Shown: piece after piece, positions 2,083 to 43,580 of the stretch
Layout: every line of letters starts with the position of its first letter
How positions within the stretch are numbered: the stretch's first letter is position 1
NCBI RefSeq assembly: GCF_006345805.1
Contig: NW_021834812.1
Location: forward strand, 1-45,379
Origin: Octopus sinensis
Taxonomy: Eukaryota
Direction: 5' to 3'
Length of the DNA: 45,379 nucleotides
The notes under the pieces: generated by a model
Seen by the model: only the letters and a program-made list of their open reading frames with translations
Told to the model about the DNA's origin: nothing
Database searches by the model: none
Translations under genes and position numbers: made by a program

Positions 2083-3140
2083 TTCTTATAACTTTAGGCA
2101 CTAGGCCCGAAATGTTTTGAGAGTGGGGGGGGGGCAGTCGATTGCATGGACCCCCACTGATTTACTGGTACTTAATTTATCGATCTCGAAAGGATGAAAG
2201 GCAAAGTCGACCTTGGCAGAATTTGAACTCAGAACATAAAGACAGACGAAATACCGCTAAGCATTTCGCCCGGAGTGCTAACGTTTCTTATTTCTTTACT
2301 GCTCACAAGGGGACAAACACAGAGGGGACAAAGAAAGACAGACAAACGGATTAAATTGATTATATCGACCCCAGTGCGTAACTGGTACTTATTTAATCGA
2401 CCCCGAAAGGATGGAAGGCAAAGTCGACCTTGGCGGAATTTGAACTCAGAACATAAAGACAGACGAAATACAGCTAAGCATTTAGCCCGGCGTACTAACG
2501 TTTCTTATTTCTTTACTGCTCACAAGGGGCTAACAGAGGGGACAAAGAAAGACAGACAAACGGATTAAATTGATTATATCGACCCCAGTACGTAACTGGT
2601 ACTTATTTAATCGACCCCGAAAGGATGAAAGGCAAAGTCGACCTTGGCGGAATTTGAACTCAGAACGTAAAGACAGACGAAATACAGCTAAGCATTTAGC
2701 CCGGCGTACTAACGTTTCTTATTTCTTTACTGCTCACAAGGGGCTAACAGAGGGGACAAAGAAAGACAGACAAACGGATTAAATTGATTATATCGACCCT
2801 AGTGCGTAACTGGTACTTATTTAATCGACCCCGAAAGGATGAAAGGCAAAGTCGACCTTGGCGGAATTTGAACTCAGAACGTAAAGACAGACGAAATACC
2901 GCTAAGCATTTCGCCCGGCGTGCTAACGTTTCTTATTTCTTTACTGCTCACAAGGGGACAAAGAAAGACAGACAAACGGATTAAACTGATTATATCGACT
3001 CTAGTGCGTAACTGGTACTTATTTAATCGACCCCGAAAGGATAAAAGGCAAAGTCGACCTTGGCGGAATTTGAACTCAGAACATAAAGACAGACGAAATA
3101 CAGCTAAGCATTTCGCCCGGCGTGCTAACGTTTCTGCCAT
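2083..3140 (-). mobile_element. Head-to-tail pentamer of a tRNA-derived SINE with a Meta-like central domain
   Basis: Anchor GTCGACCTTGG at 2206, 2423, 2637, 2851, 3053 (periods 217/214/214/202). Minus strand contains GTCGACTTTGCCTTTCATCCTTTCGGGGTCGAT, resembling the MetaSINE domain, and the B-box-like GAGTTCAAATTCC. Confidence 0.85.
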
Positions 3141-3319: not shown

Positions 3320-4322
3320 CGCGGTCCGACGTCTCCATTGCGAGCAGTGGCGTGCCTCAAGGTTCAGTGCTTGGGCCCTTGTTGTTCCTAGTCTTCATAA
3401 ATGACTTGCCCAACGACCTCACGCAACACACCCTTCTATTTGCCGACGATATCAAACTGGTCGCTCCTCGCGGTAATATAGAGGATCTTCGTCGATGCCT
3501 CCACCAAATTTGGAAGTGGTCTAACAATTGGGACCTGTGCCTGAACGTGTCAAAGTGCTGTCATCTGCCTGTCGGCTCTACTCCTGCAACTCAACTTGAT
3601 TTCGAGCCGGGTCGTCTGCTGCTGGAGAGGACCGATCAGGTAAAGGACCTAGGTATCTTGGTGGATTCCTCCTTTTCGCCTTCGGCCCAGTGCGTCCATG
3701 CTGCCAACAAAGCACGCGGAATTCTGTTCTTGATTCGACGGTCATTCGGAATGCTCACAGCAGCCATATTCCTACCACTCTATGTCACGCTGGTGAGACC
3801 CATATTGGAGTATGGGATTCAAGCCTCTTCTCCTCTTATCTCCTCAAAACATACACATCTCGAAGAGTCCAGAAGCTGGCTACCCGCATGGTTCATGGTC
3901 TCAAAATTTCCTACGAAGAAAGGCTGAGGACGCTCGACCTTTATTCTCTTGAAAAACGCCGCCGCCGTGGTGATCTCATTCTCATCTCGCCCACAACATC
4001 ATAAGCGGAAAGTGTACCTCTCGAAAGAGCTGTTCTTCACTCCTGCTCCAGAGCGTCGGCTGCGGGGTCATTCCGAAAAGCTCTACTTGCGACGATTTCA
4101 TCTCAATCGAAGAGAGGAGCTTTCTCCGTCCGGGTTGCGGATCCGTGGAACAAGCTGCCAGACGAGATGGTGAAGATGCCGACGACCGCTTTGTTCAAAG
4201 CCTACCTTGACCTCAAGTGGCCTGAACTCTTTACATGAACACCACCTTGTACTTAACTCCATGTCCCCCTACATGGCCTTGTTATTTACTTTTGAGCCAA
4301 ATTAACTAACTAACTAACTAAC
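3320..4322 (+). mobile_element. 5'-truncated, frameshifted CR1/L2-group LINE (RT C-terminal half, 3' UTR, (CTAA)n tail)
   Basis: GVPQGSVLGPLLFLVFIND...LFADDIKL, LVRPILEYG, VQKLATRMV..SYEERL..LDLYSLEKRRRRGDLI, RLRGH and WNKLP motifs spread over three frames; ends in taactaactaacta. Confidence 0.9.
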
Positions 4323-6848: not shown

Positions 6849-6890
6849 TACAGTGATACAGTGATTTTTCGCTGTACATCTTGAAATATA

Positions 6891-7294
6891 TATTTCTTTA
6901 CTACCCACAAGGGGCTAAACATAGAGGGGACAACCAAGGACAGACAAACGGATTAAGTCGATTACATTGACCCCAGTGTGTAACTGGTACTTAATTTATC
7001 GACCCCGAAAAGATAAAAGGCAAAGTCTACCTCGGCAAATTTGAACTCAGAACGTAACGGCAGACGAATACCTATTTCTTACTACCCCACGGGGCTAACA
7101 CAGAGAGGACAAACAAGGAAGACAAACTGATTTTCTATTACATCGACCCCAATGCGTAACTGGTACTTATTTATCGACCCCGAAAGGATGAAAGGCAAAG
7201 TCGACCTCGGCGGAATTCGAACTCAGAACGTAACGGCAGACGAAATACCGCTAAGCATTTCGCCCGGCGTGCTAACATTTCTGCCAGCTCGCCG
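6891..7294 (-). mobile_element. Dimeric Meta-like SINE flanked by a 14-bp target-site duplication
   Basis: One full and one head-truncated unit; CATCTTGAAATATA at 6877-6890 and 7295-7308. Confidence 0.85.
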
Positions 7295-18377: not shown

Positions 18378-18541
18378 ATGTGTGTGTACGTGTGTGTGTG
18401 TGTGTGTGTACATGTGTGTGTACAGTGTGTGTGTGTGCGTGTGTGTGTGTACATGTGTGTGTGTGTGTGTGTGTGCGTGTGTGTGTGTGTACAGGTATTG
18501 TAATATCTGTTCGCCTAGATATATAACAAATTGTGTAGATC

Positions 18542-20105
18542 GATACAAGGAAGCCGCTATGCGGTCAATTGTTTTTACTAGAAATAGTAGCTTAATCTCA
18601 GTAAAAAGAAAAAAAAAAGATGGCCGCTACTGTATTTAAAAAAATATATGGATGACGATATTTCATAATGTAGGGTGGTATCTATGTAGCTGCTATATAT
18701 ACTAGAAATAGCAGCGAAATCTCTGAATAATTTACAGTATCTCATCTCTACAAAAATGGGCATTTCGTTATGTATTCCTAGATGTATACCAAACTCTGTA
18801 GAATCAACACAAGGAAGCTGCTATGCGGTCAATTGTCTTTACTAGAAATAGAAGTTTAATCTCAGTAAAAAGAAGAAAAAAAATGGACGCTACTCTATTT
18901 AAAAAATATATGAATGACGATATTTGATAATCTAGGGTGGCTTCTATGTAGCTGCTATATATACTAGACATAGCAGCGAAATATCTGCATAATTTACAGT
19001 ATCTTATCTCTACAAAAATGGACGACATTTCATTATGTAGTCACAGGTGCATACCAAACTATGTAGAATCGATACAAGCCGCTATGCGGTCTATTGTTTT
19101 ACTAGGAACAGTAGTTTAATCTCAGTAAAAAGGGAGAAAAAATGGACGTTACTGTATTTTAAAAAATATATGAATGACGATATTTGATAATGTAAGGTGG
19201 CATCTGTGGAAGTTTGTGACTTAGTGGTTAGGGTGTCAGCATCATCATCGTAAGACTGTGGTTTCGATTCCTGGACCGAGCGACGCGTTGTGCTCTTGAG
19301 CAAAACACTTCATTTCACGTTGCTCCAGTCCACTCAGCTGGCAAAAATGAGTAACGCTGCGATGGACTGGCGTCCTGTCCAGCTGGGGAACACATTCGCC
19401 ATAGAAACCGGGAAACCGGGCCCATGAGCCTGACTAGGCTTTAAAAGGGCGCATTTATTTTATTAAGGTGGCATCTATGTAGCTGCTATATATACTAGAA
19501 ATAGCAGCGAAATCTCTGCATAATTTGCAGTATCATATCTCTACAAAAATGGACGGCATTTCATCATGTAGTCACAGGTGTATACCAAACTATGTAGAAT
19601 AGATACAATGCGGTCTATTGTTTTACTAGAAATAGTAGCTTGATCGCAACGAAATGTTAAAAAATGGACGCTACTGGCTTTTAAAAAATATATGGATGAT
19701 ATCCGATAATATAAGGTGGCATCTATGTAGCTACTTGATATACTAGAAATAGAAGCGAAATCTCTGCTTAATTTACAGTGTCTTATCTCTAAAAAGATGG
19801 ACGACATTTCATGATGTAGTTCTAGATAGACTAATCGTGATAAGAAGAAAATATATACAAAACTAAGTAGACAGGATACAAGGAAGCCATCATGCGGTCT
19901 ATTGCTTTACTAGAAATAGTAGCTTAATCTCAGTAAAAGGAGAAACAGAATAGACGATACTGTCTTTTAAAGAATATATGGATGATGTTCGATAATACAA
20001 GGAGGCATCTATGTGGCTACTTGCTTATACTAGAAATAGCAGCGAAACCTTTGCATAATTTATAGCATCTTTTTCCTTGACAAAAATGGATGATACTTCA
20101 TCAAT
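18542..20105. repeat. Diverged tandem repeat, five ~265-bp units, one interrupted by a SINE
   Basis: Unit starts (GATACAAGGAAGC-like) at 18542, 18806, 19071, 19602, 19875. Confidence 0.9.
19206..19463 (+). mobile_element. SINE head B + tail Y with a 13-bp TSD
   Basis: TAAGGTGGCATCT at 19193-19205 and 19464-19476. Confidence 0.92.
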
Positions 20106-25537: not shown

Positions 25538-26133
25538 ATATTTCTGTATTGCCCACAAGGGGTTAAACATAGAGGGGACAAACAAGGACAGACAAAGGGA
25601 TTAAGTCGATTAGATCGATCCCAGAGTGTAACTGGTACTTTATTTATCGACCCCGAAAGGATGAAAGGCAAAGTCGACCTCGGCGAAATTTGAACTCAGA
25701 ACGTAACGGCAGACGAAATACGTATTTCTTACTACCCACAAGGGGTTAAACACAGAGGGAACAAACAAGGACAGACGAACGGATTAAGTCGATTACATCG
25801 ACCCCAGTGCGTAACTGGTGCTTAATTTATCGACCCGAAAGGATGGAAGGCAAAGTCGACTTCGGCGTAATTTGAACTCAGAACGTAGCGGCAGACGAAA
25901 TACCTTTTCTTTACTACCCACAAGGGGCTAAACACAGAGAGGTTAAACAAGGACAGACGAACGGACTAAGTCGATTATATCGACCCCAGTGCGTAACTGG
26001 TACTTATTTAATCGACCCCGAAAGGATGATAGGCAAAATCGACCTCGGCTGAATTTGAACTCAGAACGCAGCGGCGGACGAAAGACAACAAAGCATTTCG
26101 CCCGGTGGGCTAACGTTTCTGCCAGCTCGCCGC
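25538..26133 (-). mobile_element. Trimeric Meta-like SINE flanked by a single 16-bp TSD
   Basis: CACAATGTGGGATTAT at 25522-25537 and 26134-26149; one full and two head-truncated units. Confidence 0.9.
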
Positions 26134-27432: not shown

Positions 27433-27499
27433 GTATAAATATATATAATGACACCTCCTTCTATTCCCCTCTGCCCTCTAACCCCACACGTAGCTACCA

Positions 27500-28420
27500 A
27501 CAGACGGTATCCTCACTGTCCAAGACTCATCATCTCGTCCTCCCCGTCTCCCCCGCACCGCATCCAACCTAATTGTGCGAACCCCACGTACCCCCCACCA
27601 TTTACTTCCTCCCCAAAATCCACAAACCCAACAACCCTGGCCGCCCCATCGTCTCCGCCTGTAACTGCCCCACGGAGCTCATCTCTAAATACCTCGACCG
27701 TGTGTCCTTGCCCCCCTAGTGGCATCTTTCCCCCACATCCACGATACCAACCATGCTCTCCGGCTTTTCAACTCTTTCTCCTCCTCCCGGCTCCTCCAAA
27801 ATCCTTTTTACTATGGACATCCAAAGCCTCTATACTGTTATCCCTCACCACGAAGGACTGCAGGCCTTCGACACTTTCTTGACCTCCGCTCTAACCCTGC
27901 CTGACACCTCCACACTCATTCGTCTGGCCGAACTTGTCCTTACTCTGAACTGCTTCTCGTTCGCGGGCGAGTTCTACCATCAGGTCTCGGGAGTGGCCAT
28001 GGGAACGCGAATGGGCCCCAACTATGCGAACCTGTTCGTTGGCTATGTTGAGGCCCAAATATCTCTAATTTCACTGGTCCCACTCCTGAACTATATGGTC
28101 GTTATATTGACGACATTATCGGTGCCACCTCCTCTCCGCGAACATCTAGATTCCTTCCTCTCTTTCGTCCAATCTTTCCATCCAGCCCTCCACTTCACTT
28201 CCACTATCTCCAACACCTCTGTCTCCTTCCTCGACATTTCGGTTAGCATTCTTCACTCCACTCTTACCACCCTCCATTCACTACAAACACACAGACTCAC
28301 ACTCATACCTCAACTTCTCTTCCTCCCACCCAGAACACACCAAGCTTTCCATCCCCTATTCCCAATTCCTCCGTCTACGTAGGCTCTGTAGTGACGACCA
28401 TGACTTTGAGACTCAGTCTC
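27500..28420 (+). pseudogene. PLE reverse transcriptase, frameshifted
   Basis: [56 protein letters not shown] (shifted frame), VSFLDI, TDSHSYL, HPEHTKLSIPYSQFLRLRRLCS. Confidence 0.92.
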
Positions 28421-28759
28421 AACGTATGGCTCACCACTTCACCCTACGTGGATACCCCCTCACCACTATCCACACCGCCCTTGCCAGAGCACGGTCCGTG
28501 GACCGTGTTCTGCTGCTCTTCTCCCCGAACCCGCCCTGTAGTCTCCGCCTCCCTTTTCCCCTCACTTACCACCCCACGACCCTACGTCTCCAACGCACCA
28601 TTCTTCGAGCTTTCCGTCATCTCCAGTCCGACCCGTCCACTTCACACCTCTTCCCTAACCGACCCCTCCCCTCTTTCAAACGAGCCCACAACCTTCGAGA
28701 CCTTTTGGTCCATAGCTCCTTCCCTGACCTACCTCCCAACCCGGCTCGTTCCCTGCCTC

Positions 28760-29140
28760 TCCGCCCACGTTGCCGCACTTGCCCTACCTCTCCAACACCA
28801 CCCGCCTCACTAGCACCCACCATCGACCCTATCCCATCATCCACTCCTTCACCTGCACCTCCAGCAATATTATCTATTGCATCTCTTGCTCTCTCTGCAA
28901 TTCCTTGTACATCGGACAAACGGGACGCCGCTTGGCTGACCGGTTCGCGGAACACCTTCGTGACATCCACCTTGTGAACGACACACCGGTCTCACGCCAT
29001 TTCCGCTCCACCGGTCACTCCTTGCAACACCTATCTGTGTTCGGTTTGTCCTTACACAGAGGCCATCCGGATTCCCGTTTTGCGCCGTGAACAGGAATTA
29101 ATCTTCTCTCTTCGCTCTTATACGCCATTTGGTCTCAACT
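28760..29140 (+). pseudogene. PLE Cys/His linker and GIY-YIG endonuclease, frameshifted
   Basis: CRTC, HSFTCTSSNIIYCISCSLCNSLYIGQTGRRLADRFAEH, VSRHF, RREQELIFSL..YTPFGLN. Confidence 0.92.
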
Positions 29141-29955
29141 CTCCCCCCCCCTCCTATCTAACCCCCCTCTCCCTCCTCACCTTATCCTTTCCGCCCGACC
29201 CCTACTGTATTCCAGTCCTTCATCCTTTCACCCCTACTTCCCCTTCCCTTCTTCCCTCTTTCCCCCCTCTTCCCCTTCCCTCTGCTCCCTCACTCCCTCT
29301 CTCCCCCCTTCTCTCTCCCCTCTCCCTCTTTTCCTCCTTCATCCCCCTCCTCCCCCCTCTCCTCTTCTCCCTCCTCATCCTCCCCCCTCCCCCTCTTCTC
29401 CTCACTACACCACATGACTTTACACATCACATCACATATGATGTGCCATACTAATACACACACCAACTAATACATACTAATACGTACTAATACATACTAG
29501 TACATACTAATACTTACACCAACCCTATACATACACACGTCCAGACCCCGCATACGCACTTATACTTACACACACACACACACACACACCTATACATACC
29601 AATACGTACTAATACATACTAATACATACTAATACATACACCAACCCCATACATACGCACGTCCAGACCAATCTTACGCACTAATACTCTCTCATACACA
29701 CCACACACACACACACACACCCTTATACATACTAATACATACACCAACCCTATACATACACACATCCAGACCCCTCCCACGCACTTTTAGCTGGTCCCTC
29801 AACCCTTTTATCAACCCTATTATCTCCCTTATTTCGCTCTCGCGTCTCATGTTTGATCTTTGACCTCTGGCCGAATCAGATCGCCATGTTGATTCGTTAG
29901 CTACTGCACGCATTTTTTTTCTCTCCTTCTTTCTGTGTTTTTCTCTCTCTGTGTA

Positions 29956-29992
29956 TCTTCTGTTGAAGAGCGTAGGCTCGAAACGTTAAAGA
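29956..29992 (+). ncRNA. Minimal hammerhead-like motif, atypical core (A6U plus an extra A)
   Basis: UCUU CUGUUGAA GAGC GUAG GCUC GAAAC GUU AAAGA; ACGU palindromic stem III; stem I imperfect in this copy. Confidence 0.5.
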
Positions 29993-30098
29993 CTTGTTTT
30001 ATTTATATTTCCTGAGCGCCATACTAATACAATTGTTCGTTGTTTTCCACCTGCCTTCGTCTTTTGTTTATTTTCATAAAGCTTCCCGTTATTATATA

Positions 30099-30135
<37 letters not shown>

Positions 30136-30137
<2 letters not shown>

Positions 30138-30254
30138 ATTTAAAGCAGCAGAAAATTCAACAAAACCTGTTACTCTGAGTTTCCCGTTGCCGTTACGGCA
30201 ACAGGAAACTCAGAGAGTAACAGGTTTTGTTGAATTTTCTGCTGCTTTAAATAA
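30136..30254. repeat. Near-perfect hairpin (57/59-bp arms, 3-nt loop) within a ~200-bp (AT)n-flanked element (30133-30329)
   Basis: Arms 30136-30192 and 30196-30254; one substitution and one 2-nt indel. Confidence 0.92.
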
Positions 30255-30326
30255 AGCATATTACTCTACCACTGGTATTTGAGTACTCTTTTTTCCACCT
30301 TGTTTCACATTTATGTGTTTTACTCC

Positions 30327-30374
<48 letters not shown>

Positions 30375-30397
30375 ATATATTATATATATATATATAG

Positions 30398-30512
30398 TGA
30401 GATTTACAAAAACAAAAGACGTAGACGGGTGGGTGTGTACACAACAATCAGATGTATTGTTTAACGGTGGGGAAGTGAGAAAGTCTTTTACGTTTCGAGT
30501 CTACGCTCTTCG

Positions 30513-30515
<3 letters not shown>
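30398..30515 (-). mobile_element. Truncated copy of the PLE terminal segment between (AT)n tracts; hammerhead 5' half missing
   Basis: Minus strand GAAGAGCGTAGACTCGAAACGTAAAAGAC, homologous to 29960-30110. Confidence 0.7.
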
Positions 30516-30556
<41 letters not shown>

Positions 30557-30738
30557 CAATAAGGGTTCAGCAACGAATTGCCTTACCACATACCGAATTT
30601 AGAAATAGCAGTCAAAGGGTTATAGCTATTTCTTCTACTAAAAAGGGAGATCTCAGTAAAAACAGCAATTGGAAGGCTGACACAAACAGGTAAGAGAGAA
30701 TGAATTAACCGCAATCTATCAAACATTTTAAAAAGTTA

Positions 30739-30844
30739 TCCACGGACGTACGTTTCGAAATCAAGTTTTAGGAAAGCATAAGAATTAAAATATTAAATAT
30801 TAAATAATTCTATCTTACCGAAACTTCTTTCTCTTCAGCGTGGA
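30739..30844 (-). ncRNA. Type-I hammerhead ribozyme, array copy 1
   Basis: UCCACG CUGAAGA GAAA...UUUC GAAAC GUAC GUC CGUGGA. Confidence 0.85.
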
Positions 30845-31341
30845 ATACTATAATCATAAATGATTATATATTGAATTTTGAGATACTAGGATGGTACCCA
30901 ACTCAACTCAGTATCAGAGCGAGCTAGAATCCTCAACTAGTATCACCGAATTCAAATTTGTGAATGAAACGATTGTGTCAACAGCCCCTTCCCACCCGCG
31001 TGTAGCCAAAACAAGATGCTGTTGTAGTCATCTACTGAGATAAAATATGGTTATCCGTAATAATGAAGGGTGAAATTAATTAATTTGGAATAATTATCAA
31101 TTACACCAAGTAGTCTTCGGCATGTAAAAGCCTCATTTGAGGAAAATTTAAGTAATACTAAGCAATAAGGGTTCAGCAACGAATTGCCTTACCACATACC
31201 GAATTTAGAAATAGCAGTCAAAGGGTTATAGCTATTTCTTCTACTAAAAAGGAGATCTCAGTAAAAACAGCAATTGGAAGGCTGACACAACAGGTAAGAG
31301 AGAATGAATTAACCGCAATCTATCAAACATTTTTAAAGTTA

Positions 31342-31448
31342 TCCACGGACGTACGTTTCGAAATCAAGTTTTAGGAAAGCATAAGAATTAAAATATTAAA
31401 TATTAAATAATTCTATCTTACCGAAACTTCTTTTCTCTTCAGCGTGGA
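31342..31448 (-). ncRNA. Type-I hammerhead ribozyme, array copy 2
   Basis: Same fold; canonical core intact. Confidence 0.87.
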
Positions 31449-31938
31449 ATACTATAATCATAAATGATTATATATTGAATTTTGAGATACTAGGAGGTAC
31501 CAACTCAACTCAGTATCAGAGCGAGCTAGAATCCTCAACTAGTATCACCGAATTCAAATTTGTGAATGAAACGATTGTGTCAACAGCCCCTTCCCACCCG
31601 CGTGTAGCCAAAAACAAGATGCTGTAGTCATCTACTGAGATAAAATATGGTTATCCGTAATAATGAAGGGTGAAATTAATTAATTTGGAATAATTATCAA
31701 TTACACCAAGTAGTCTTCGGCATGTAAAAGCCTCTGAGGAAAATTTAAGTAATACTAAGCAATAAGGGTTCAGCAACGAATTGCCTTACCACATACCGAA
31801 TTTAGAAATAGCAGTCAAAGGGTTATAGCTATTTCTACTAAAAAAGGGAGATCTCAGTAAAAACAGCAATTGGAAGGCTGACACAAACAGGTAAGAGAGA
31901 ATGAATTAACCGCAATCTATCAAACATTTTTAAAGTTA

Positions 31939-32042
31939 TCCACGGACGTACGTTTCGAAATCAAGTTTTAGGAAAGCATAATATAAATATTAAATATTAA
32001 ATAATTCTATCTTACCGAAACTTCTTTCTCTTTCAGCGTGGA
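31939..32042 (-). ncRNA. Hammerhead, array copy 3 (core reads CUGAAAGA, one extra A)
   Basis: Plus strand reads ctctttcagcg rather than ctcttcagcg; real mutation or homopolymer sequencing error. Confidence 0.6.
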
Positions 32043-32536
32043 ATACTATAATCATAAATGATTATATATTGAATTTTGAGATACTAGGAGGTACCAACTC
32101 AACTCAGTATCAGAGCGAGCTAGAATCCTCAACTAGTATCACCGAATTCAAATTTGTGAATGAAACGATTGTGTCAACAGCCCCTTCCCACCCGCGTGTA
32201 GCCAAAACAAGATGCTGTAGTCATCTACTGAGATAAAATATGGTTATCCGTAATAATGAAGGGTGAAATTAATTAATTTGGAATAATTATCAATTACACC
32301 AAGTAGTCTTCGGCATGTAAAAGCCTCATTTGAGGAAAATTTAAGTAATACTAAGCAATAAGGGTTCAGCAACGAATTGCCTTACCACATACCGAATTTA
32401 GAAATAGCAGTCAAAGGGTTATAGCTATTTCTTCTACTAAAAAGGGAGATCTCAGTAAAAACAGCAATTGGAAGGCTGACACAAACAGGTAAGAGAGAAT
32501 GAATTAACCGCAATCTATCAAACATTTTTAAAGTTA

Positions 32537-32642
32537 TCCACGGACGTACGTTTCGAAATCAAGTTTAGGAAAGCATAAGAATTAAAATATTAAATATTAA
32601 ATAATTCTATCTTACCGAAACTTCTTTTCTCTTCAGCGTGGA
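32537..32642 (-). ncRNA. Type-I hammerhead ribozyme, array copy 4
   Basis: Same fold; canonical core intact. Confidence 0.87.
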
Positions 32643-33139
32643 ATACTATAATCATAAATGATTATATATTGAATTTTGAGATACTAGGAGGAGGTACCAA
32701 CTCAACTCAGTATCAGAGCGAGCTAGAATCCTCAACTAGTATCACCGAATTCAAATTTGTGAATGAAACGATTGTGTCAACAGCCCCTTCCCACCCGCGT
32801 GTAGCCAAAACAAGATGCTGTAGTCATCTACTGAGATAAAAATATGGTTATCCGTAATAATGAAGGGTGAAATTAATTAATTTGGAATAATTATCAATTA
32901 CACCAAGTAGTCTTCGGCATGTAAAGCCTCATTTGAGGAAAATTTAAGTAATACTAAGCAATAAGGGTTCAGCAACGAATTGCCTTACCACATACCGAAT
33001 TTAGAAATAGCAGTCAAAGGGTTATAGCTATTTCTTCTACTAAAAAGGGAGATCTCAGTAAAAACAGCAATTGGAAGGCTGACACAAACAGGTAAGAGAG
33101 AATGAATTAACCGCAATCTATCAAACATTTTTAAAGTTA

Positions 33140-33246
33140 TCCACGGACGTACGTTTCGAAATCAAGTTTTAGGAAAGCATAAGAATTAAAATATTAAATA
33201 TTAAATAATTCTATCTTACCGAAACTTCTTTTCTCTTCAGCGTGGA
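33140..33246 (-). ncRNA. Type-I hammerhead ribozyme, array copy 5
   Basis: 6-bp stem I, CUGAAGA, GAAA/UUUC stem II enclosing 68 nt, GAAAC, ACGUACGU palindrome, GUC site. Confidence 0.87.
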
Positions 33247-33737
33247 ATACTATAATCATAAATGATTATATTGAATTTTGAGATACTAGGAGGTACCAAC
33301 TCAACTCAGTATCAGAGCGAGCTAGAATCCTCAACTAGTATCACCGAATTCAAATTTGTGAATGAAACGATTGTGTCAACAGCCCCTTCCCACCCGCGTG
33401 TAGCCAAAACAAGATGCTGTAGTCATCTACTGAGATAAAATATGGTTATCCGTAATAATGAAGGGTGAAATTAATTAATTTGGAATAATTATCAATTACA
33501 CCAAGTAGTCTTCGGCATGTAAAAGCCTCATTTGAGGAAAATTTAAGTAATACTAAGCAATAAGGGTTCAGCAACGAATTGCCTTACCACATACCGAATT
33601 TAGAAATAGCAGTCAAGGGTTATAGCTATTTCTTCTACTAAAAAGGGAGATCTCAGTAAAAACAGCAATTGGAAGGCTGACACAAACAGGTAAGAGAGAA
33701 TGAATTAACCGCAATCTATCAAACATTTTTAAAGTTA

Positions 33738-33844
33738 TCCACGGACGTACGTTTCGAAATCAAGTTTTAGGAAAGCATAAGAATTAAAATATTAAATATT
33801 AAATAATTCTATCTTACCGAAACTTCTTTTCTCTTCAGCGTGGA
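33738..33844 (-). ncRNA. Type-I hammerhead ribozyme, array copy 6
   Basis: Same fold; canonical core intact. Confidence 0.87.
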
Positions 33845-34335
33845 ATACTATAATCATAAATGATTATATATTGAATTTTGAGATACTAGGGGTACCAACT
33901 CAACTCAGTATCAGAGCGAGCTAGAATCCTCAACTAGTATCACCGAATTCAAATTTGTGAATGAAACGATTGTGTCAACAGCCCCTTCCCACCCGCGTGT
34001 AGCCAAAACAAGATGCTGTAGTCATCTACTGAGATAAAATATGGTTATCCGTAATAATGAAGGGTGAAATTAATTAATTTGGAATAATATCAATTACACC
34101 AAGTAGTCTTCGGCATGTAAAAGCCTCATTTGAGGAAAATTTAAGTATACTAAGCAATAAGGGTTCAGCAACGAATTGCCTTACCACATACCGAATTTAG
34201 AAATAGCAGTCAAAGGGTTATAGCTATTTCTTCTACTAAAAAGGGAGATCTCAGTAAAAACAGCAATTGGAAGGCTGACACAAACAGGTAAGAGAGAATG
34301 AATTAACCGCAATCTATCAAACATTTTTAAAGTTA

Positions 34336-34441
34336 TCCACGGACGTACGTTTCGAAATCAAGTTTTAGGAAAGCATAAGAATTAAATATTAAATATTAAA
34401 TAATTCTATCTTACCGAAACTTCTTTTCTCTTCAGCGTGGA
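34336..34441 (-). ncRNA. Type-I hammerhead ribozyme, array copy 7
   Basis: Same fold; canonical core intact. Confidence 0.87.
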
Positions 34442-34935
34442 ATACTATATCATAAATGATTATATATTGAATTTTGAGATACTAGGAGGTACCAACTCAA
34501 CTCAGTATCAGAGCGAGCTAGAATCCTCAACTAGTATCACCGAATTCAAATTTGTGAATGAAACGATTGTGTCAACAGCCCCTTCCCACCCGCGTGTAGC
34601 CAAAACAAGATGCTGTAGTCATCTACTGAGATAAAATATGGTTATCCGTAATAATGAAGGGTGAAATTAATTAATTTGGAATAATTATCAATTACACCAA
34701 GTAGTCTTCGGCATGTAAAAGCCTCATTTGAGGAAAATTTAAGTAATACTAAGCAATAAGGTTCAGCAACGAATTGCCTTACCACATACCGAATTTAGAA
34801 ATAGCAGTCAAAGGGTTATAGCTATTTCTTCTACTAAAAGGGAGATCTCAGTAAAAACAGCAATTGGAAGGCTGACACAAACAGGTAAGAAGAGAGAATG
34901 AATTAACCGCAATCTATCAAACATTTTTAAAGTTA

Positions 34936-35041
34936 TCCACGGACGTACGTTTCGAAATCAAGTTTTAGGAAAGCATAAGAATTAAAATATAAATATTAAA
35001 TAATTCTATCTTACCGAAACTTCTTTTCTCTTCAGCGTGGA
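34936..35041 (-). ncRNA. Type-I hammerhead ribozyme, array copy 8
   Basis: Same fold; canonical core intact. Confidence 0.87.
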
Positions 35042-35318
35042 ATACTATAATCATAAATGATTATATATTGAATTTTGAGATACTAGAGAGGTACCAACTC
35101 AACTCAGTATCAGAGCGAGCTAGAATCCTCAACTAGTATCACCGAATTCAAATTTGTGAATGAAACGATTGTGTCAACAGCCCCTTCCCACCCGCGTGTA
35201 GCCAAAACAAGATGCTGTAGTCATCTACTGAGATATATATATTAATGTCAAATAGTGAGAATGAGTTCCCAACACCGCATTGGTGGATAAAATTTCTTCC
35301 CTTGTGTACGATTGGTTC

Positions 35319-35491
35319 CATGTTAAGAAAAATATCTTAATACCTTAACAATTTTTCAAGCCGATCACATGGAAGGATGGTGTCTATCATCAATTTGGAT
35401 GTTCTTTTCATCCAAAATGGAGATGTATACCATCCTTCCATATGATCGACTTGAAAAGTTGTTAAATTATTAAGATATTTATCTTAACATG
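35319..35491. repeat. Imperfect inverted repeat (63-bp arms) with a self-complementary spacer
   Basis: 35319-35381 vs 35429-35491; inner TTTGGATG/CATCCAAA. Confidence 0.8.
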
Positions 35492-35605
35492 AAATAAATG
35501 GTACTCTTAATACATGTATACATATATATATATATATATATATATATCCATATATATATAACAATGATAAATCTCAGAGCGAGTTATAAACAGTAGCGGT
35601 AACAC

Positions 35606-35817
35606 ATCGTGATGCATATATGTCATTTGAATATGGCTAACCCATAAGGGTGGATGCTACTGTAGTTTGTAGCCCCAGGAAGATACCTCCTCCAGCTGGC
35701 TGGACACAGATAGTGTGTCTATAGCCAGCTGGAGGAGGTATCTTCCTGGGGCTACAAACTACAGTAGCATCCACCCTTATGGGTTAGCCATATTCAAATG
35801 GCATATATGCATCACGA

Positions 35818-35818
<1 letters not shown>
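35606..35818. repeat. Near-perfect hairpin, 96-bp arms with one mismatch
   Basis: 35606-35701 vs 35723-35818; inner GACACA/TGTGTC; right arm runs into (AT)n. Confidence 0.95.
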
Positions 35819-35876
<58 letters not shown>

Positions 35877-35909
35877 ATATATATATATATATATATACAT
35901 ATGTGTGTG

Positions 35910-36030
35910 TGAGGGAACAACAAACAACGTACTAGTATGTCACTCAGTTTCGAGTCTATGCTCTTCTACAGGAACGAGGACAGCAAAGAGATTGATGGAG
36001 GAAAGAAACGAAGAGACAAAAAAACCTGTT
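35910..36030 (-). mobile_element. Degenerate relative of the PLE terminal segment
   Basis: Minus strand CTGTAGAAGAGCATAGACTCGAAAC at about 35947-35971; cleavage side lost. Confidence 0.55.
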
Positions 36031-36066
36031 TCGATTAACTCTTGTCTATATTGAATATAATTCTAT

Positions 36067-36476
36067 GAGTGGCTGTGTGGTAAGTAGCTTGCTAACCAAC
36101 CACATGGTTCCGGGTTCAGTCCCACTGCGTGGCATCTTGGGCAAGTGTCTTCAGCTATAGCCTCGGGCCGACCAAAGCCTTATGAGTGGATTTGGTAGAC
36201 GGAAACTGAAAGAAACCCGTCGTATATATGTATATATATATATATGTGTGTGCGTGTGTGTTTGTGTGTCTGTGTTTATCCCCCTAGCATTGCTTGACAA
36301 CCGATGCTGGTGTGTTTACATCCCCGTCACTTAGCGGTTCGGCAAAAGAGACCGATGGAATAAGTACTGGGCTTACAAAAGAATAAGTCCCAGGGTCGAG
36401 TGTTGCTCGACTAAAGGCGGTGCTCCAGCATGGCCGCAGTCAAAATGACTGAAACAAGTAAAAGAGTAAAAGAGTA
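36067..36476 (+). mobile_element. Full-length CORE-like SINE
   Basis: Same family as 8948. Confidence 0.9.
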
Positions 36477-38202: not shown

Positions 38203-38529
38203 TGATTCAATAAAAAAATAATTTGGCGTATAATAAAACTAACTTTACGACCTCATCGTAAAATATGATGTTACTTTCGTAGGGGGTGAGAAAATTAATC
38301 AAACATTTTTTTCGGGGCGGTACGAAGCACAGAAATTGTTGGGAACAGTTAGTACCCTAAATAGAAGGCGGAAAATGGTAATATAGACCTCTAAACAGCT
38401 GGACTGTTGATAGATAGAATGATATTTTTTAAAGGAAACCGCACGTAAATAGACGTGGTAGATACTCCTGATGAAAAGGATCAATCGTGAAGCTGTACGT
38501 CACTCAATACTCACCGTATGTATGTGGGA

Positions 38530-38768
38530 GTGTGAGTAAAGTGTATGAGTGTTTGTGTTCAAGTGTGAGTAAAGTGTATGAGTGTTTGTGTTCAAGTGTG
38601 AGTAAAGTGTATGAGTGTTTGTGTTCAAGTGTGAGTAAAGTGTATGAGTGTTTGTGTTCAAGTGTGAGTAAAGTGTATGAGTGTTTGTGTTCAAGTGTGA
38701 GTAAAGTGTATGAGTGTTTGTGTTCAAGTGTGAGTAAAGTGTATGAGTGTTTGTGTTCAAGTGTGAGT
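38530..38768. repeat. 33-bp perfect minisatellite, about 7.2 copies
   Basis: GTGTGAGTAAAGTGTATGAGTGTTTGTGTTCAA repeated without spacers. Confidence 0.95.
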
Positions 38769-43392: not shown

Positions 43393-43580
43393 ATAGGGAG
43401 AGTTTACGAAAAAAACAAAAGACGAAGACAGGCGGTGTACAAAAACAAACAGATGTACTGGTATAACGCTCAGGAATAGAAAAATCTTTTACGTTTCGAG
43501 CGTACGCTCTTCTACAGAAAGGGACACAGAAAAAACAAGGAGAGAAAAAAATCTGTGTAGTGGCTAACGATCAATCATGT
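43393..43580 (-). mobile_element. Solo PLE terminal segment between (AT)n tracts
   Basis: Homologous to 29880-30110 (CATGATTGATCGTTAGCCACTAC... vs CATGTTGATTCGTTAGCTACTGC...). Confidence 0.75.
43486..43521 (-). ncRNA. Minimal hammerhead-like motif (36 nt), A6U plus extra-A core
   Basis: CUUU CUGUAGAA GAGC GUAC GCUC GAAAC GUA AAAG: perfect stems I and II, ACGU stem III. Confidence 0.55.

What the first reader, a model, noticed from the sequence alone, without database searches (positions are those of the whole stretch)
30554..35235. 4.7-kb array of eight hammerhead ribozymes: candidate ~600-nt retrozyme/circRNA system
Seen: about 7.8 near-identical ~600-bp units bounded by (AT)n. Each minus-strand unit reads UCCACG-CUGAAGA-GAAA-[68 nt]-UUUC-GAAAC-GUAC-GUC^CGUGGA, a complete type-I hammerhead, 7 of 8 with a canonical core. 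Stem III is only 2 bp in a monomer but is the palindrome ACGUACGU, giving 8 bp in a dimer. The stem II insert refolds into a long AU-rich helix (AAGUUU/AAACUU, AGAAUUA/UAAUUCU). Established: tandem HHR repeats (newt satellite 2, schistosome SM-alpha, metazoan non-LTR retrozymes) self-cleave multimeric transcripts into monomers that can circularise, and PLE-associated small HHRs cleave as dimers. Inference: a minus-strand transcript would give ~600-nt monomers starting CGUGGAUAAC and ending GAAACGUACGUC. That is longer than the roughly 170-400 nt I recall for metazoan retrozymes, and the stem II is unusually long. No ORF is present, so mobilisation would be in trans, plausibly by a PLE. Near-identity of the copies suggests recent amplification. 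I cannot tell whether this family is already catalogued.
Basis: partly seen in the sequence, partly recalled or inferred. Interest (0 to 1): 0.92.

Follow-up and report, generated by a model that had tools for sequence, protein, structure and literature searches.

The report
Tandem hammerhead-ribozyme repeat (animal retrozyme)
A 4.7-kb block of eight near-identical 600-bp repeats each carries a complete self-cleaving hammerhead RNA motif, so it fits the already described class of animal "retrozymes" (non-coding mobile repeats thought to spread through small circular RNAs); it is a new example with an unusually long side arm, not a new kind of element.

Summary
Window 30554-35235 holds 7.8 head-to-tail copies of a 601-bp, 34% GC unit with no ORF, embedded in (TA)n. 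On the minus strand every unit carries a type I hammerhead: helix I of 6 bp, core CUGAAGA...GAAA, a 2-bp helix III inside the palindrome ACGUACGU, and cleavage at GUC^C.

A structural descriptor finds only these copies, against 0.0075 hits expected per 45-kb window. Rfam Hammerhead_1 aligns over all 45 model positions but scores 21.6 bits, below the 34-bit threshold, with a 72-nt insertion in helix II.

The monomer RNA folds far better than shuffles (z about -6.5 to -7), and better than its complement (z -3.6). Two copies are predicted to form a double hammerhead with an 8-bp helix III.

The copies differ by 27 small indels and 1 substitution. That looks like long-read noise, or a very young array.

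The best reading is a metazoan non-LTR retrozyme. The 600-nt size lies inside the published range (51-972 bp), so it is not exceptional. The extended helix II, and possibly the host lineage, are the new points.

No relatives were found. Covariation, transcription, cleavage and circularisation remain untested.

The parts
30554..35235 (-). Tandem array of 7.8 copies of a 601-nt non-coding unit (34% GC). On the hammerhead strand it starts at unit position ~308-311 and ends at unit position 190, counting the cleavage site as position 1.
34936..35041 (-). Hammerhead domain 1 (helix I 5' strand to helix I 3' strand); predicted cleavage between 34942 and 34941.
34336..34441 (-). Hammerhead domain 2; predicted cleavage between 34342 and 34341.
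33738..33844 (-). Hammerhead domain 3; predicted cleavage between 33744 and 33743. This is the copy matched full length by Rfam Hammerhead_1 (21.6 bits).
33140..33246 (-). Hammerhead domain 4; predicted cleavage between 33146 and 33145.
32537..32642 (-). Hammerhead domain 5; predicted cleavage between 32543 and 32542.
31939..32042 (-). Hammerhead domain 6, the variant copy: core reads CUGAAAGA (one extra A, with one A missing 5 nt later) and the helix II arm has a 4-nt deletion. Probably sequencing noise; an inactive copy if real. Predicted cleavage between 31945 and 31944.
31342..31448 (-). Hammerhead domain 7; predicted cleavage between 31348 and 31347.
30739..30844 (-). Hammerhead domain 8; predicted cleavage between 30745 and 30744.
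30516..30553 (.). (TA)19 microsatellite abutting the array end that is 3' on the hammerhead strand; presumed half of the insertion target.
35236..35245 (.). Short (AT)n run abutting the array end that is 5' on the hammerhead strand. It overlaps the unit sequence by 3 nt (TAT).
27448..29150 (+). Context only, not shown to be part of the element. A 5'-truncated, frameshifted Penelope-like element fragment with a reverse transcriptase followed by a GIY-YIG nuclease; its 5' end also abuts (TA)n. It represents the retroelement class proposed to mobilise animal retrozymes in trans.

Best explanation
The array is a genomic copy of a metazoan non-LTR retrozyme: a non-coding, non-autonomous retroelement whose unit carries a type I hammerhead ribozyme.

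**Proposed cycle**
1. The minus strand is transcribed as a multimer.
2. Each hammerhead cuts after GUC (C17), giving 601-nt monomers that start CGUGGAUAAC and end GAAACGUACGUC, with 5'-OH and 2',3'-cyclic phosphate ends.
3. Cutting happens in cis through the 2-bp helix III, or through a double hammerhead in which the ACGUACGU of two neighbouring units pair into an 8-bp helix III.
4. A host tRNA ligase of the RtcB type circularises the monomer into a highly base-paired circle.
5. A reverse transcriptase supplied in trans, most plausibly from a Penelope-like element, copies the circle round and round. The tandem cDNA is inserted at a nick in (TA)n.

**Shown here:** the array, the complete motif in every unit, its rarity by chance, the strand-specific fold stability, the predicted dimer, the absence of an ORF, the (TA)n borders, and Penelope-like sequence nearby.

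**Inferred from published work on this class:** transcription, cleavage, ligation, rolling-circle reverse transcription, and the identity of the mobilising enzyme.
For: **Motif**
- All conserved core positions are present: C3-A9 = CUGAAGA, G12-A14 = GAA, A15.1-U16.1, C17, with a G10.1-C11.1 pair at the base of helix II. This holds in 7 of 8 units.
- A descriptor search hits nothing else in the window. The expectation is 0.0075 hits per 45-kb window.
- Rfam Hammerhead_1 aligns over model positions 1-45. Its consensus aUccagCUGAcGAGU..ACGAAACGcgCGUCcuggAu aligns to our UCCACGCUGAAGAGA..UCGAAACGUACGUCCGUGGA.

**Fold**
- The minimum-free-energy and centroid folds of the 119-nt domain, and of the whole 598-nt monomer, form helix I and helix II and leave the core open.
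- The hammerhead-strand monomer folds to -167.3 kcal/mol (z = -6.45); the complement folds to -132.2 (z = -3.60).
- As a circle, the hammerhead strand gives -160.4 (z = -7.0, 19 G-U pairs) and the complement -126.4 (7 G-U pairs).

**Dimer**
- Co-folding two domains gives the double hammerhead at -53.8 kcal/mol against 2 x -20.7.
- In a 942-nt tandem transcript the two ACGUACGU stretches pair with each other.

**Architecture**
- Tandem units, no ORF, 34% GC, and no terminal repeats.
- The array ends at arbitrary unit positions inside (TA)n.
- This agrees with the published definition (PMC7229834) and with the microsatellite insertion bias reported for Penelope-like elements (10.1101/2021.04.23.441226).

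**Copy identity**
- Copies differ by 1 substitution and 27 small indels over 4197 nt, as expected if all units were copied from one template in one event.
Against: - Rfam finds no hammerhead at its gathering threshold, or at E<=10 on the 6-kb region. The only match is sub-threshold: 21.6 bits against 34.
- No relatives were found, so no helix has covariation support and no second genomic locus is known.
- The 72-nt arm replaces the loop 2 that normally contacts helix I, so fast cleavage at physiological magnesium is not assured.
- The adjacent Penelope-like fragment shares no sequence with the unit, lies on the opposite strand, and has no hammerhead.
- Near-identity of copies is equally compatible with recent DNA-level duplication.
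- There is no expression evidence of any kind.
Confidence: 0.75

Rival explanations
1. Ordinary DNA-level satellite. A single hammerhead-bearing sequence, for example an old retrozyme monomer or a Penelope-like terminal repeat, was amplified at this site by unequal crossing-over or replication slippage. No RNA intermediate was involved and the element is not currently mobile.
For: Only one locus is known, and nothing similar occurs elsewhere in the window. Tandem arrays of other units are common in this window. Near-identical copies fit recent local duplication.
Against: The motif is intact in all or nearly all copies. The RNA fold is much more stable on the hammerhead strand than on its complement, which points to constraint at the RNA level. 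The array sits cleanly inside (TA)n with partial units at both ends, as expected for insertion of a multimeric cDNA. This reading does not deny the hammerhead; it denies only the retrotransposition step.
Confidence: 0.13
2. Part of a Penelope-like element. The repeats would be tandem terminal repeats (pLTRs) of the neighbouring Penelope-like insertion rather than a separate non-autonomous element.
For: A reverse transcriptase plus GIY-YIG fragment lies at 27448-29150. Penelope-like elements carry hammerheads in their terminal repeats and form complex tandem and inverted insertions in microsatellites (PMC4209133; 10.1101/2021.04.23.441226).
Against: There is no sequence similarity between the unit and any other part of the window, including the Penelope-like fragment and its flanks. 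The array is on the opposite strand, and no ORF lies between its hammerheads. The motif has the canonical 6-bp helix I and a helix III, unlike the minimal hammerheads of Penelope-like elements. About 1.4 kb of microsatellite, a foldback element and a truncated repeat separate the two.
Confidence: 0.06
3. A chance or decayed hammerhead look-alike with no catalytic activity, sitting in an otherwise ordinary repeat.
For: The Rfam score is below threshold. Helix II is AU-rich and carries a 72-nt arm in place of loop 2. The local fold z-score of the 119-nt domain is only -1.15. Perreault et al. warn that consensus-conforming motifs do arise by chance in large databases (PMC3088659).
Against: The expected number of chance hits for a 600-bp unit is about 1e-4 (derived). 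The helix I length (6 bp), the 4-bp first segment of helix II and the palindromic helix III all match the specific metazoan type I architecture (PMC4209133). The tandem setting is the setting in which such ribozymes are known.
Confidence: 0.04
4. Assembly artefact. The copy number, or the array itself, was inflated or mis-joined by the assembler.
For: Copy differences are almost only 1-4-nt indels, mostly in short homopolymer or dinucleotide runs. That is the error profile of an incompletely polished long-read assembly.
Against: Each copy has its own private pattern of indels, so the copies were not simply duplicated in silico. The 4.7-kb array is short enough to be spanned by single long reads. 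Both junctions with (TA)n are clean. An error in copy number would not affect the identity of the unit.
Confidence: 0.02

Closest known systems
Metazoan non-LTR retrozymes (Cervera & de la Pena 2020, NAR 48:5054, PMC7229834; Li, Clavereau & Pollet 2026 preprint, 10.64898/2026.07.22.740005)
   Same: Head-to-tail repeats of a few hundred bp. One type I hammerhead per unit, on one strand only. No ORF, low GC, no LTR. The array contains eight hammerhead copies; the preprint reports that most families top out at about seven repeat units. A Penelope-like element is present in the same genome. The unit length lies inside the 51-972 bp range of the 2026 survey.
   Different: The unit is longer than the 170-400 nt of the invertebrate examples characterised experimentally. 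Helix II carries a 72-nt extension in place of loop 2. Expression and circularity are untested here.
Amphibian satellite 2 / axolotl hammerheads (the consensus behind Rfam RF00163 Hammerhead_1)
   Same: Type I topology and a 6-bp helix I. The stretch around helix III is palindromic: Rfam consensus ACGcgCGU, here ACGUACGU. This allows a double hammerhead in tandem transcripts.
   Different: The amphibian HHR_Amex1 type has a single-base-pair helix III and conserved loop 1-loop 2 contacts. Here helix III has 2 bp plus a tetraloop, the form the authors call invertebrate-like, and there is no loop 2. The unit is 601 nt against about 330-350 nt.
Minimal hammerheads in the terminal repeats of Penelope-like elements (Cervera & de la Pena 2014, PMC4209133)
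   Same: Type I hammerheads in retroelement-associated repeats. Dimer-dependent architecture with a palindrome at helix III. Insertion into microsatellites.
   Different: Those motifs lack helix III, have a 4-5-bp helix I and a 7-8-bp helix II with a bulged base, and flank a reverse transcriptase ORF. Here the motif is canonical, no ORF lies between copies, and the unit is unrelated in sequence to the adjacent Penelope-like fragment.
Plant LTR retrozymes and hammerhead viroids (Avsunviroidae)
   Same: A highly base-paired circular RNA of about 600 nt is the expected product, which is similar in size to plant retrozyme circles (600-1000 nt, PMC5680766 abstract). Cleavage depends on a hammerhead.
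   Different: Plant retrozymes have type III hammerheads in LTRs, with a primer binding site and polypurine tract. Viroids have hammerheads in both polarities and no DNA copy. Here there is one polarity only, and the element is encoded in genomic DNA.

Membership tests
Hammerhead ribozyme, type I | Conserved catalytic core: C3 U4 G5 A6 N7 G8 A9, G12 A13 A14, A15.1-U16.1 pair, H17 at the cleavage site | tested here: met
   CUGAAGA ... GAAA ... GUC^C is exact in 7 of 8 units. The eighth has one extra A in the core, probably noise.
Hammerhead ribozyme, type I | Three helices around the core, with helix I open-ended | tested here: met
   Helix I is UCCACG/CGUGGA (6 bp). Helix II is GAAA/UUUC followed by an extended arm. 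Helix III is AC/GU capped by GUAC. Helices I and II appear in unconstrained MFE and centroid folds of the domain and of the whole monomer.
Hammerhead ribozyme, type I | Match to the curated covariance model (Rfam RF00163) at its gathering score | tested here: inconclusive
   No hit at gathering or at E<=10 over 6 kb. On the 127-nt stretch there is a full-length alignment (model 1-45) at 21.6 bits against a gathering score of 34, E=0.0027, with a 72-nt insertion where the model has 10 nt. This threshold is an operational cut-off, not a biochemical criterion.
Hammerhead ribozyme, type I | Helices supported by compensatory changes among relatives | not testable with these tools
   The eight copies are identical in the helices. 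No relative was found in the protein, metagenome, prokaryotic-genome or viral collections.
Hammerhead ribozyme, type I | Site-specific self-cleavage | not testable with these tools
   Needs in vitro transcription of monomer and dimer constructs.
Metazoan non-LTR retrozyme | Head-to-tail tandem repeats, each unit with one type I hammerhead on the same strand | tested here: met
   Eight hammerheads at 597-603-nt spacing, all on the minus strand and none on the plus strand.
Metazoan non-LTR retrozyme | Non-coding unit of low GC content (<45-50%) | tested here: met
   Longest stop-free stretch is 58 or 80 aa on the circularised unit. GC content is 34%. No homologue was found for any six-frame translation.
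Metazoan non-LTR retrozyme | No long terminal repeats | tested here: met
   The array ends in partial units directly against (TA)n. The primer binding site and polypurine tract that accompany LTRs in plant retrozymes were not searched for.
Metazoan non-LTR retrozyme | Unit length within the reported range | tested here: met
   601 nt. This is above the 170-400 nt of PMC7229834 but inside the 51-972 bp of 10.64898/2026.07.22.740005.
Metazoan non-LTR retrozyme | Expressed as linear and circular RNA of unit length | not testable with these tools
   No transcript data are available. Only the predicted fold stability of the hammerhead strand was obtained.
Metazoan non-LTR retrozyme | Dispersed multiple loci in the genome (evidence of mobility) | not testable with these tools
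   Only one 45-kb window is available, with no other copy or fragment in it. The source genome is not in the searchable collections.
Penelope-like element terminal repeat (pLTR) hammerhead | Hammerhead-bearing repeats flank a reverse transcriptase / GIY-YIG ORF and are part of that element | tested here: not met
   There is no ORF between the hammerheads. The unit has no similarity to the neighbouring Penelope-like fragment or its flanks and lies on the other strand.
Viroid-like replicon (Avsunviroidae type) | Self-cleaving ribozymes in both polarities | tested here: not met
   No hammerhead on the plus strand, even with a relaxed descriptor. No other ribozyme family was found by Rfam.

The most novel reading that the evidence does not exclude
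The element may define a structurally distinct subclass of animal retrozyme. It would be a 601-nt, viroid-like, highly base-paired circular RNA from an invertebrate lineage in which none has been described. Its type I hammerhead keeps the canonical 6-bp helix I and the 4-bp first segment of helix II, but loop 2 is replaced by a 2x2 internal loop and a 72-nt arm. The tertiary contact would then have to be made between two internal loops, or be dispensed with in favour of obligatory dimer cleavage. The arm could serve as a second functional module, for example a recognition site for the mobilising reverse transcriptase or the ligase.
Probability: 0.3. Interest if true: 0.55.

Novelty: new member of a known kind. 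Interest (0 to 1): 0.4.

Why it matters
If the array is transcribed and processed as predicted, it adds a host lineage and a larger, more structured RNA to the list of animal retrozymes.

It also offers a natural test case for how much helix II extension a type I hammerhead tolerates. The two possible compensations are an internal-loop contact and dimer formation.

The clean (TA)n junctions and the essentially identical units make this locus a good substrate for testing the rolling-circle reverse-transcription model, and for testing its proposed dependence on Penelope-like elements.

It does not open a new class of element.

Tried and rejected
1. **Rfam, whole window and 6-kb region:** no ribozyme hit. 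Only the narrow 127-nt search recovered Hammerhead_1.
2. **Relatives through spurious ORF calls:** the 65-aa unit ORF, exact look-up of ten window ORFs, and a 456-aa concatenate of all six-frame stop-free stretches of the unit all found nothing.
3. **DNA pattern scan of metagenome contigs:** 23 hits, all at the start of a bacterial thioredoxin-like gene with no helix I. They are chance matches multiplied by relatedness.
4. **Scan of prokaryotic genomes:** 5 chance hits without an upstream core. The viral contig scan gave 0 hits.
5. **Link to the neighbouring Penelope-like fragment:** no shared sequence and no hammerhead in its flanks under a relaxed descriptor. The three loci fetched for them show no hammerhead by descriptor or Rfam.
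6. **Helitron reading of the array ends:** rejected. The 3' end (GCTT) lacks CTRR and a hairpin (read).
7. **Hammerhead-like motif in a repeated 'tail' element near the array** (CUGUWGA-A-GAGC-GUAG-RCUC-GAAACGU): it has U at the essential A6, no conserved helix I, and no Rfam hit. It is a resemblance only.
8. **Literature string searches** for the hammerhead sequence and for repeat sequences that might name the organism: nothing relevant. No paper in the held library links hammerheads or retrozymes to cephalopod repeats.
9. **tRNA scan:** no tRNA genes found by ARAGORN.

Full report

Yes. Direct-repeat analysis of 30000-36000 finds eight in-register copies with start-to-start spacing of 594-606 bp. 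TRF missed the array only because its longest period is 500. Cutting the minus strand at every CGTGGATAAC gives seven complete monomers of 597-603 nt and two partial end units.

The array occupies 30554-35235. It is bordered by (TA)19 at 30516-30553 and by a short TA run from 35236. The majority consensus is 601 nt with 34% GC.

On the minus strand seven units read UCCACG-CUGAAGA-GAAA[...]UUUC-GAAA-C-GUAC-G-UC^CGUGGA exactly. The eighth unit (32042-31939) reads CUGAAAGA and has a small deletion in the arm.

**2. Is it more than chance?**

I wrote a type I hammerhead descriptor: full core, helix I of at least 5 bp, helix II of at least 3 bp, helix III of at least 2 bp, and a helix II insert of up to 130 nt. 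It hits only the seven canonical copies in the real window. It gives 0.0075 hits per simulated 45-kb window, with 3 of 400 simulations having any hit. For a single 600-bp repeat unit the expectation is therefore about 1e-4. A much looser descriptor still finds nothing else in the window on either strand.

Rfam finds nothing at gathering thresholds and nothing at E<=10 over 6 kb. Restricted to 127 nt, where its filters are laxer, Hammerhead_1 (RF00163) aligns over all 45 model positions at 21.6 bits (gathering 34) and E=0.0027. The consensus aUccagCUGAcGAGU-[10]-ACGAAACGcgCGUCcuggAu aligns to UCCACGCUGAAGAGA-[72]-UCGAAACGUACGUCCGUGGA. The shortfall most likely reflects the 72-nt insertion in helix II. 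Rfam draws the ACGcgCGU stretch as a 4-bp helix with no loop, which is possible only in a dimer. The same palindromic logic applies to ACGUACGU here.

**3. Anatomy of the ribozyme**

- *Helix I* is 6 bp (UCCACG/CGUGGA). A 2x2 internal loop (AU/UA) follows, then two more pairs.
- *Helix II* starts with the conserved G10.1-C11.1 pair and runs 4 bp (GAAA/UUUC). A 2x2 internal loop (AG/GA) follows, then AAGUUU/AAACUU and an AU-rich hairpin that includes AGAAUUA/UAAUUCU.
- *Helix III* is A15.1-U16.1 and C15.2-G16.2, capped by GUAC.

Cervera & de la Pena describe the canonical metazoan type I motif as helix I 6 bp, helix II 4 bp, and helix III 1-2 bp with a small palindromic loop (PMC4209133). This element fits that description except that loop 2 is replaced by an internal loop plus a long arm.

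The unconstrained MFE and centroid of the 119-nt domain already show helices I and II with the core open. Forcing the full hammerhead costs only 1.1 kcal/mol (-19.0 against -20.1).

**4. Monomer or dimer?**

Co-folding two 113-nt domains gives the domain-swapped double hammerhead. It has an 8-bp ACGUACGU/ACGUACGU helix III and scores -53.8 kcal/mol against 2 x -20.7. In a 942-nt tandem transcript the MFE pairs the two ACGUACGU stretches, which lie 601 nt apart.

It is not required, however. The authors of the retrozyme paper describe a 2-bp helix III with a tetraloop as the usual invertebrate form, and report efficient cleavage by the hammerheads of most invertebrate retrozymes (PMC7229834). 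What is uncertain here is the tertiary contact, because loop 2 is absent.

**5. The rest of the unit**

There is no ORF. The longest stop-free stretch on the circularised consensus is 58 aa on the hammerhead strand and 80 aa on the complement.

The monomer is strongly structured, and more so on the hammerhead strand:

| Form | Strand | MFE (kcal/mol) | z-score | G-U pairs |
|---|---|---|---|---|
| Linear | hammerhead | -167.3 | -6.45 (0 of 100 shuffles as good) | not counted |
| Linear | complement | -132.2 | -3.60 | not counted |
| Circular | hammerhead | -160.4 | -7.0 | 19 |
| Circular | complement | -126.4 | -3.65 | 7 |

The hammerhead helices I and II are part of the global MFE. The strand asymmetry and the G-U pairs argue for constraint at the RNA level on the strand that carries the ribozyme. 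This fits a stable, largely double-stranded circle.

**6. Age and quality of the copies**

Against the consensus, the seven full units show 27 indel events and 1 substitution over 4197 nt. Most indels lie in short homopolymer or dinucleotide runs, and a few are 3-nt duplications. Real divergence is normally dominated by substitutions (general knowledge, not tested here). The differences are therefore best read as long-read consensus noise. Less likely, they are slippage during copying.

The true units are probably identical. This also makes the one 'non-canonical' core (an A gained and an A lost 5 nt apart) suspect. Identical units fit a single insertion of a multimeric cDNA or a very recent duplication.

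**7. Surroundings**

The array begins at unit position ~308-311 and ends at position 190, counting from the cleavage site. Both junctions lie in TA repeats.

The neighbourhood is a patchwork of insertions into (TA)n:
- a 5'-truncated copy of a repeated 'tail' element at 30397-30515 (minus strand);
- three foldback elements at 30129-30261, 35306-35504 and 35606-35818;
- a 5'-truncated, frameshifted Penelope-like fragment on the plus strand at 27448-29150.

The Penelope-like fragment has weak RVT_1 and GIY-YIG Pfam hits, 890 database homologues at E<=1e-5, and RT-then-GIY-YIG order on one strand. Its 5' end also abuts (TA)n. Penelope-like elements are reported to prefer microsatellite targets (10.1101/2021.04.23.441226).

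The fragment shows that the class exists in this genome. It shares no sequence with the unit, has no hammerhead, and lies on the other strand. Nothing ties this particular copy to the array.

**8. Comparison with what is known**

A 2026 preprint extends the range of consensus lengths to 51-972 bp, with a mean of 650 bp in ray-finned fishes. It finds that most families top out at about seven repeat units. It also shows sequence relatedness between retrozymes and Penelope-like terminal repeats in Xenopus (10.64898/2026.07.22.740005).

All features testable from sequence are met here. Expression, circularity and dispersal are not testable with these tools. The 72-nt helix II extension is not described in the papers I read. 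No paper in the held library reports hammerhead repeats from cephalopods. I could not verify the host organism.

**9. Relatives and covariation**

Every route open to me failed. These were protein searches with unit translations, exact look-ups, and DNA pattern scans of metagenome, prokaryotic and viral collections, which returned only chance matches. The helices therefore have no covariation support. The claim rests on motif statistics, fold predictions and architecture.

**10. Verdict**

The interpretation, a hammerhead array that is a retrozyme candidate, is supported. The most likely mechanism is the published retrozyme cycle: multimeric transcript, hammerhead self-cleavage at GUC^C, ligation to a 601-nt circle, rolling-circle reverse transcription in trans, and insertion at (TA)n. 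Only the DNA-level features are shown here.

This is a new member of a known kind with one unusual structural feature. Interest is moderate (0.4).

Noticed in passing
window 27448-29150 (+), possibly extending to ~29450: A 5'-truncated, frameshifted Penelope-like element. Reverse-transcriptase ORF pieces are followed by a GIY-YIG nuclease piece (YIGQTGRRLADRFAEH). The 5' end abuts (TA)n and a CT-rich stretch lies downstream. The best database relative is only 65% identical.
   Followed up: partly
window 29965-29984 (+), 30492-30511 (-), 35947-35966 (-), 43493-43512 (-), with ~250 nt around each: Four copies of a repeated 'tail' element ending in CGTCTTTTGTTT...(TA)n. It contains CUGUWGA-A-GAGC-GUAG-RCUC-GAAACGU, which resembles a Penelope-type minimal hammerhead but has U at the essential A6 and no conserved helix I. 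Rfam gives no hit. The copy at 30397-30515 is truncated exactly at the (TA)19 that borders the array. The copy at 35947 follows a sequence at 36023-36154 that looks by eye like a tRNA-derived SINE; ARAGORN finds no tRNA there or anywhere else in the window.
   Followed up: partly
window 30129-30261, 35306-35504, 35606-35818: Three foldback (hairpin) elements with arms of 48, 96 and 103 nt (96%, 83% and 96% complementary), each next to a (TA)n run. They give spurious microRNA-precursor hits in Rfam. They look like small palindromic insertions into TA repeats.
   Followed up: no
window 2164-3135, 6883-7249, 25539-26083: Three further tandem arrays (214 bp x 4.6, 176 bp x 2, 182 bp x 3). The TRF consensus units of at least the first and third share a segment (ACTGGTACTTA[A]TTTATCGACCCCGAAA); the listed part of the second overlaps the third. 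This suggests a second repeat family that occurs in short tandem arrays. No ribozyme motif was found in them.
   Followed up: no
window 18514-19205 and 38529-38768: A 262-bp tandem repeat (2.6 copies, 86% matches), and a 33-bp repeat with 7.3 perfectly identical copies followed by GT-rich 74- and 225-bp periodic arrays up to 39410.
   Followed up: no
window 3352-3927 (+): A LINE-type reverse transcriptase fragment (RVT_1, E=7e-13). It shows that a second class of reverse transcriptase is present in the region.
   Followed up: no
window 30554-35235 (copy differences): Differences between copies are 27 small indels against 1 substitution. This suggests the assembly is an incompletely polished long-read consensus, so single-base indels elsewhere in the window, including the frameshifts in the Penelope-like ORF, should be treated with caution.
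   Followed up: partly
loci L001-L023 (soil metagenome contigs): A relaxed hammerhead-like DNA pattern matched the 5' region and first codons (MTTKNIVQVTDQNFETTV) of a bacterial thioredoxin-like gene in 23 related contigs. This is a reminder that core-only patterns give family-multiplied false positives.
   Followed up: yes
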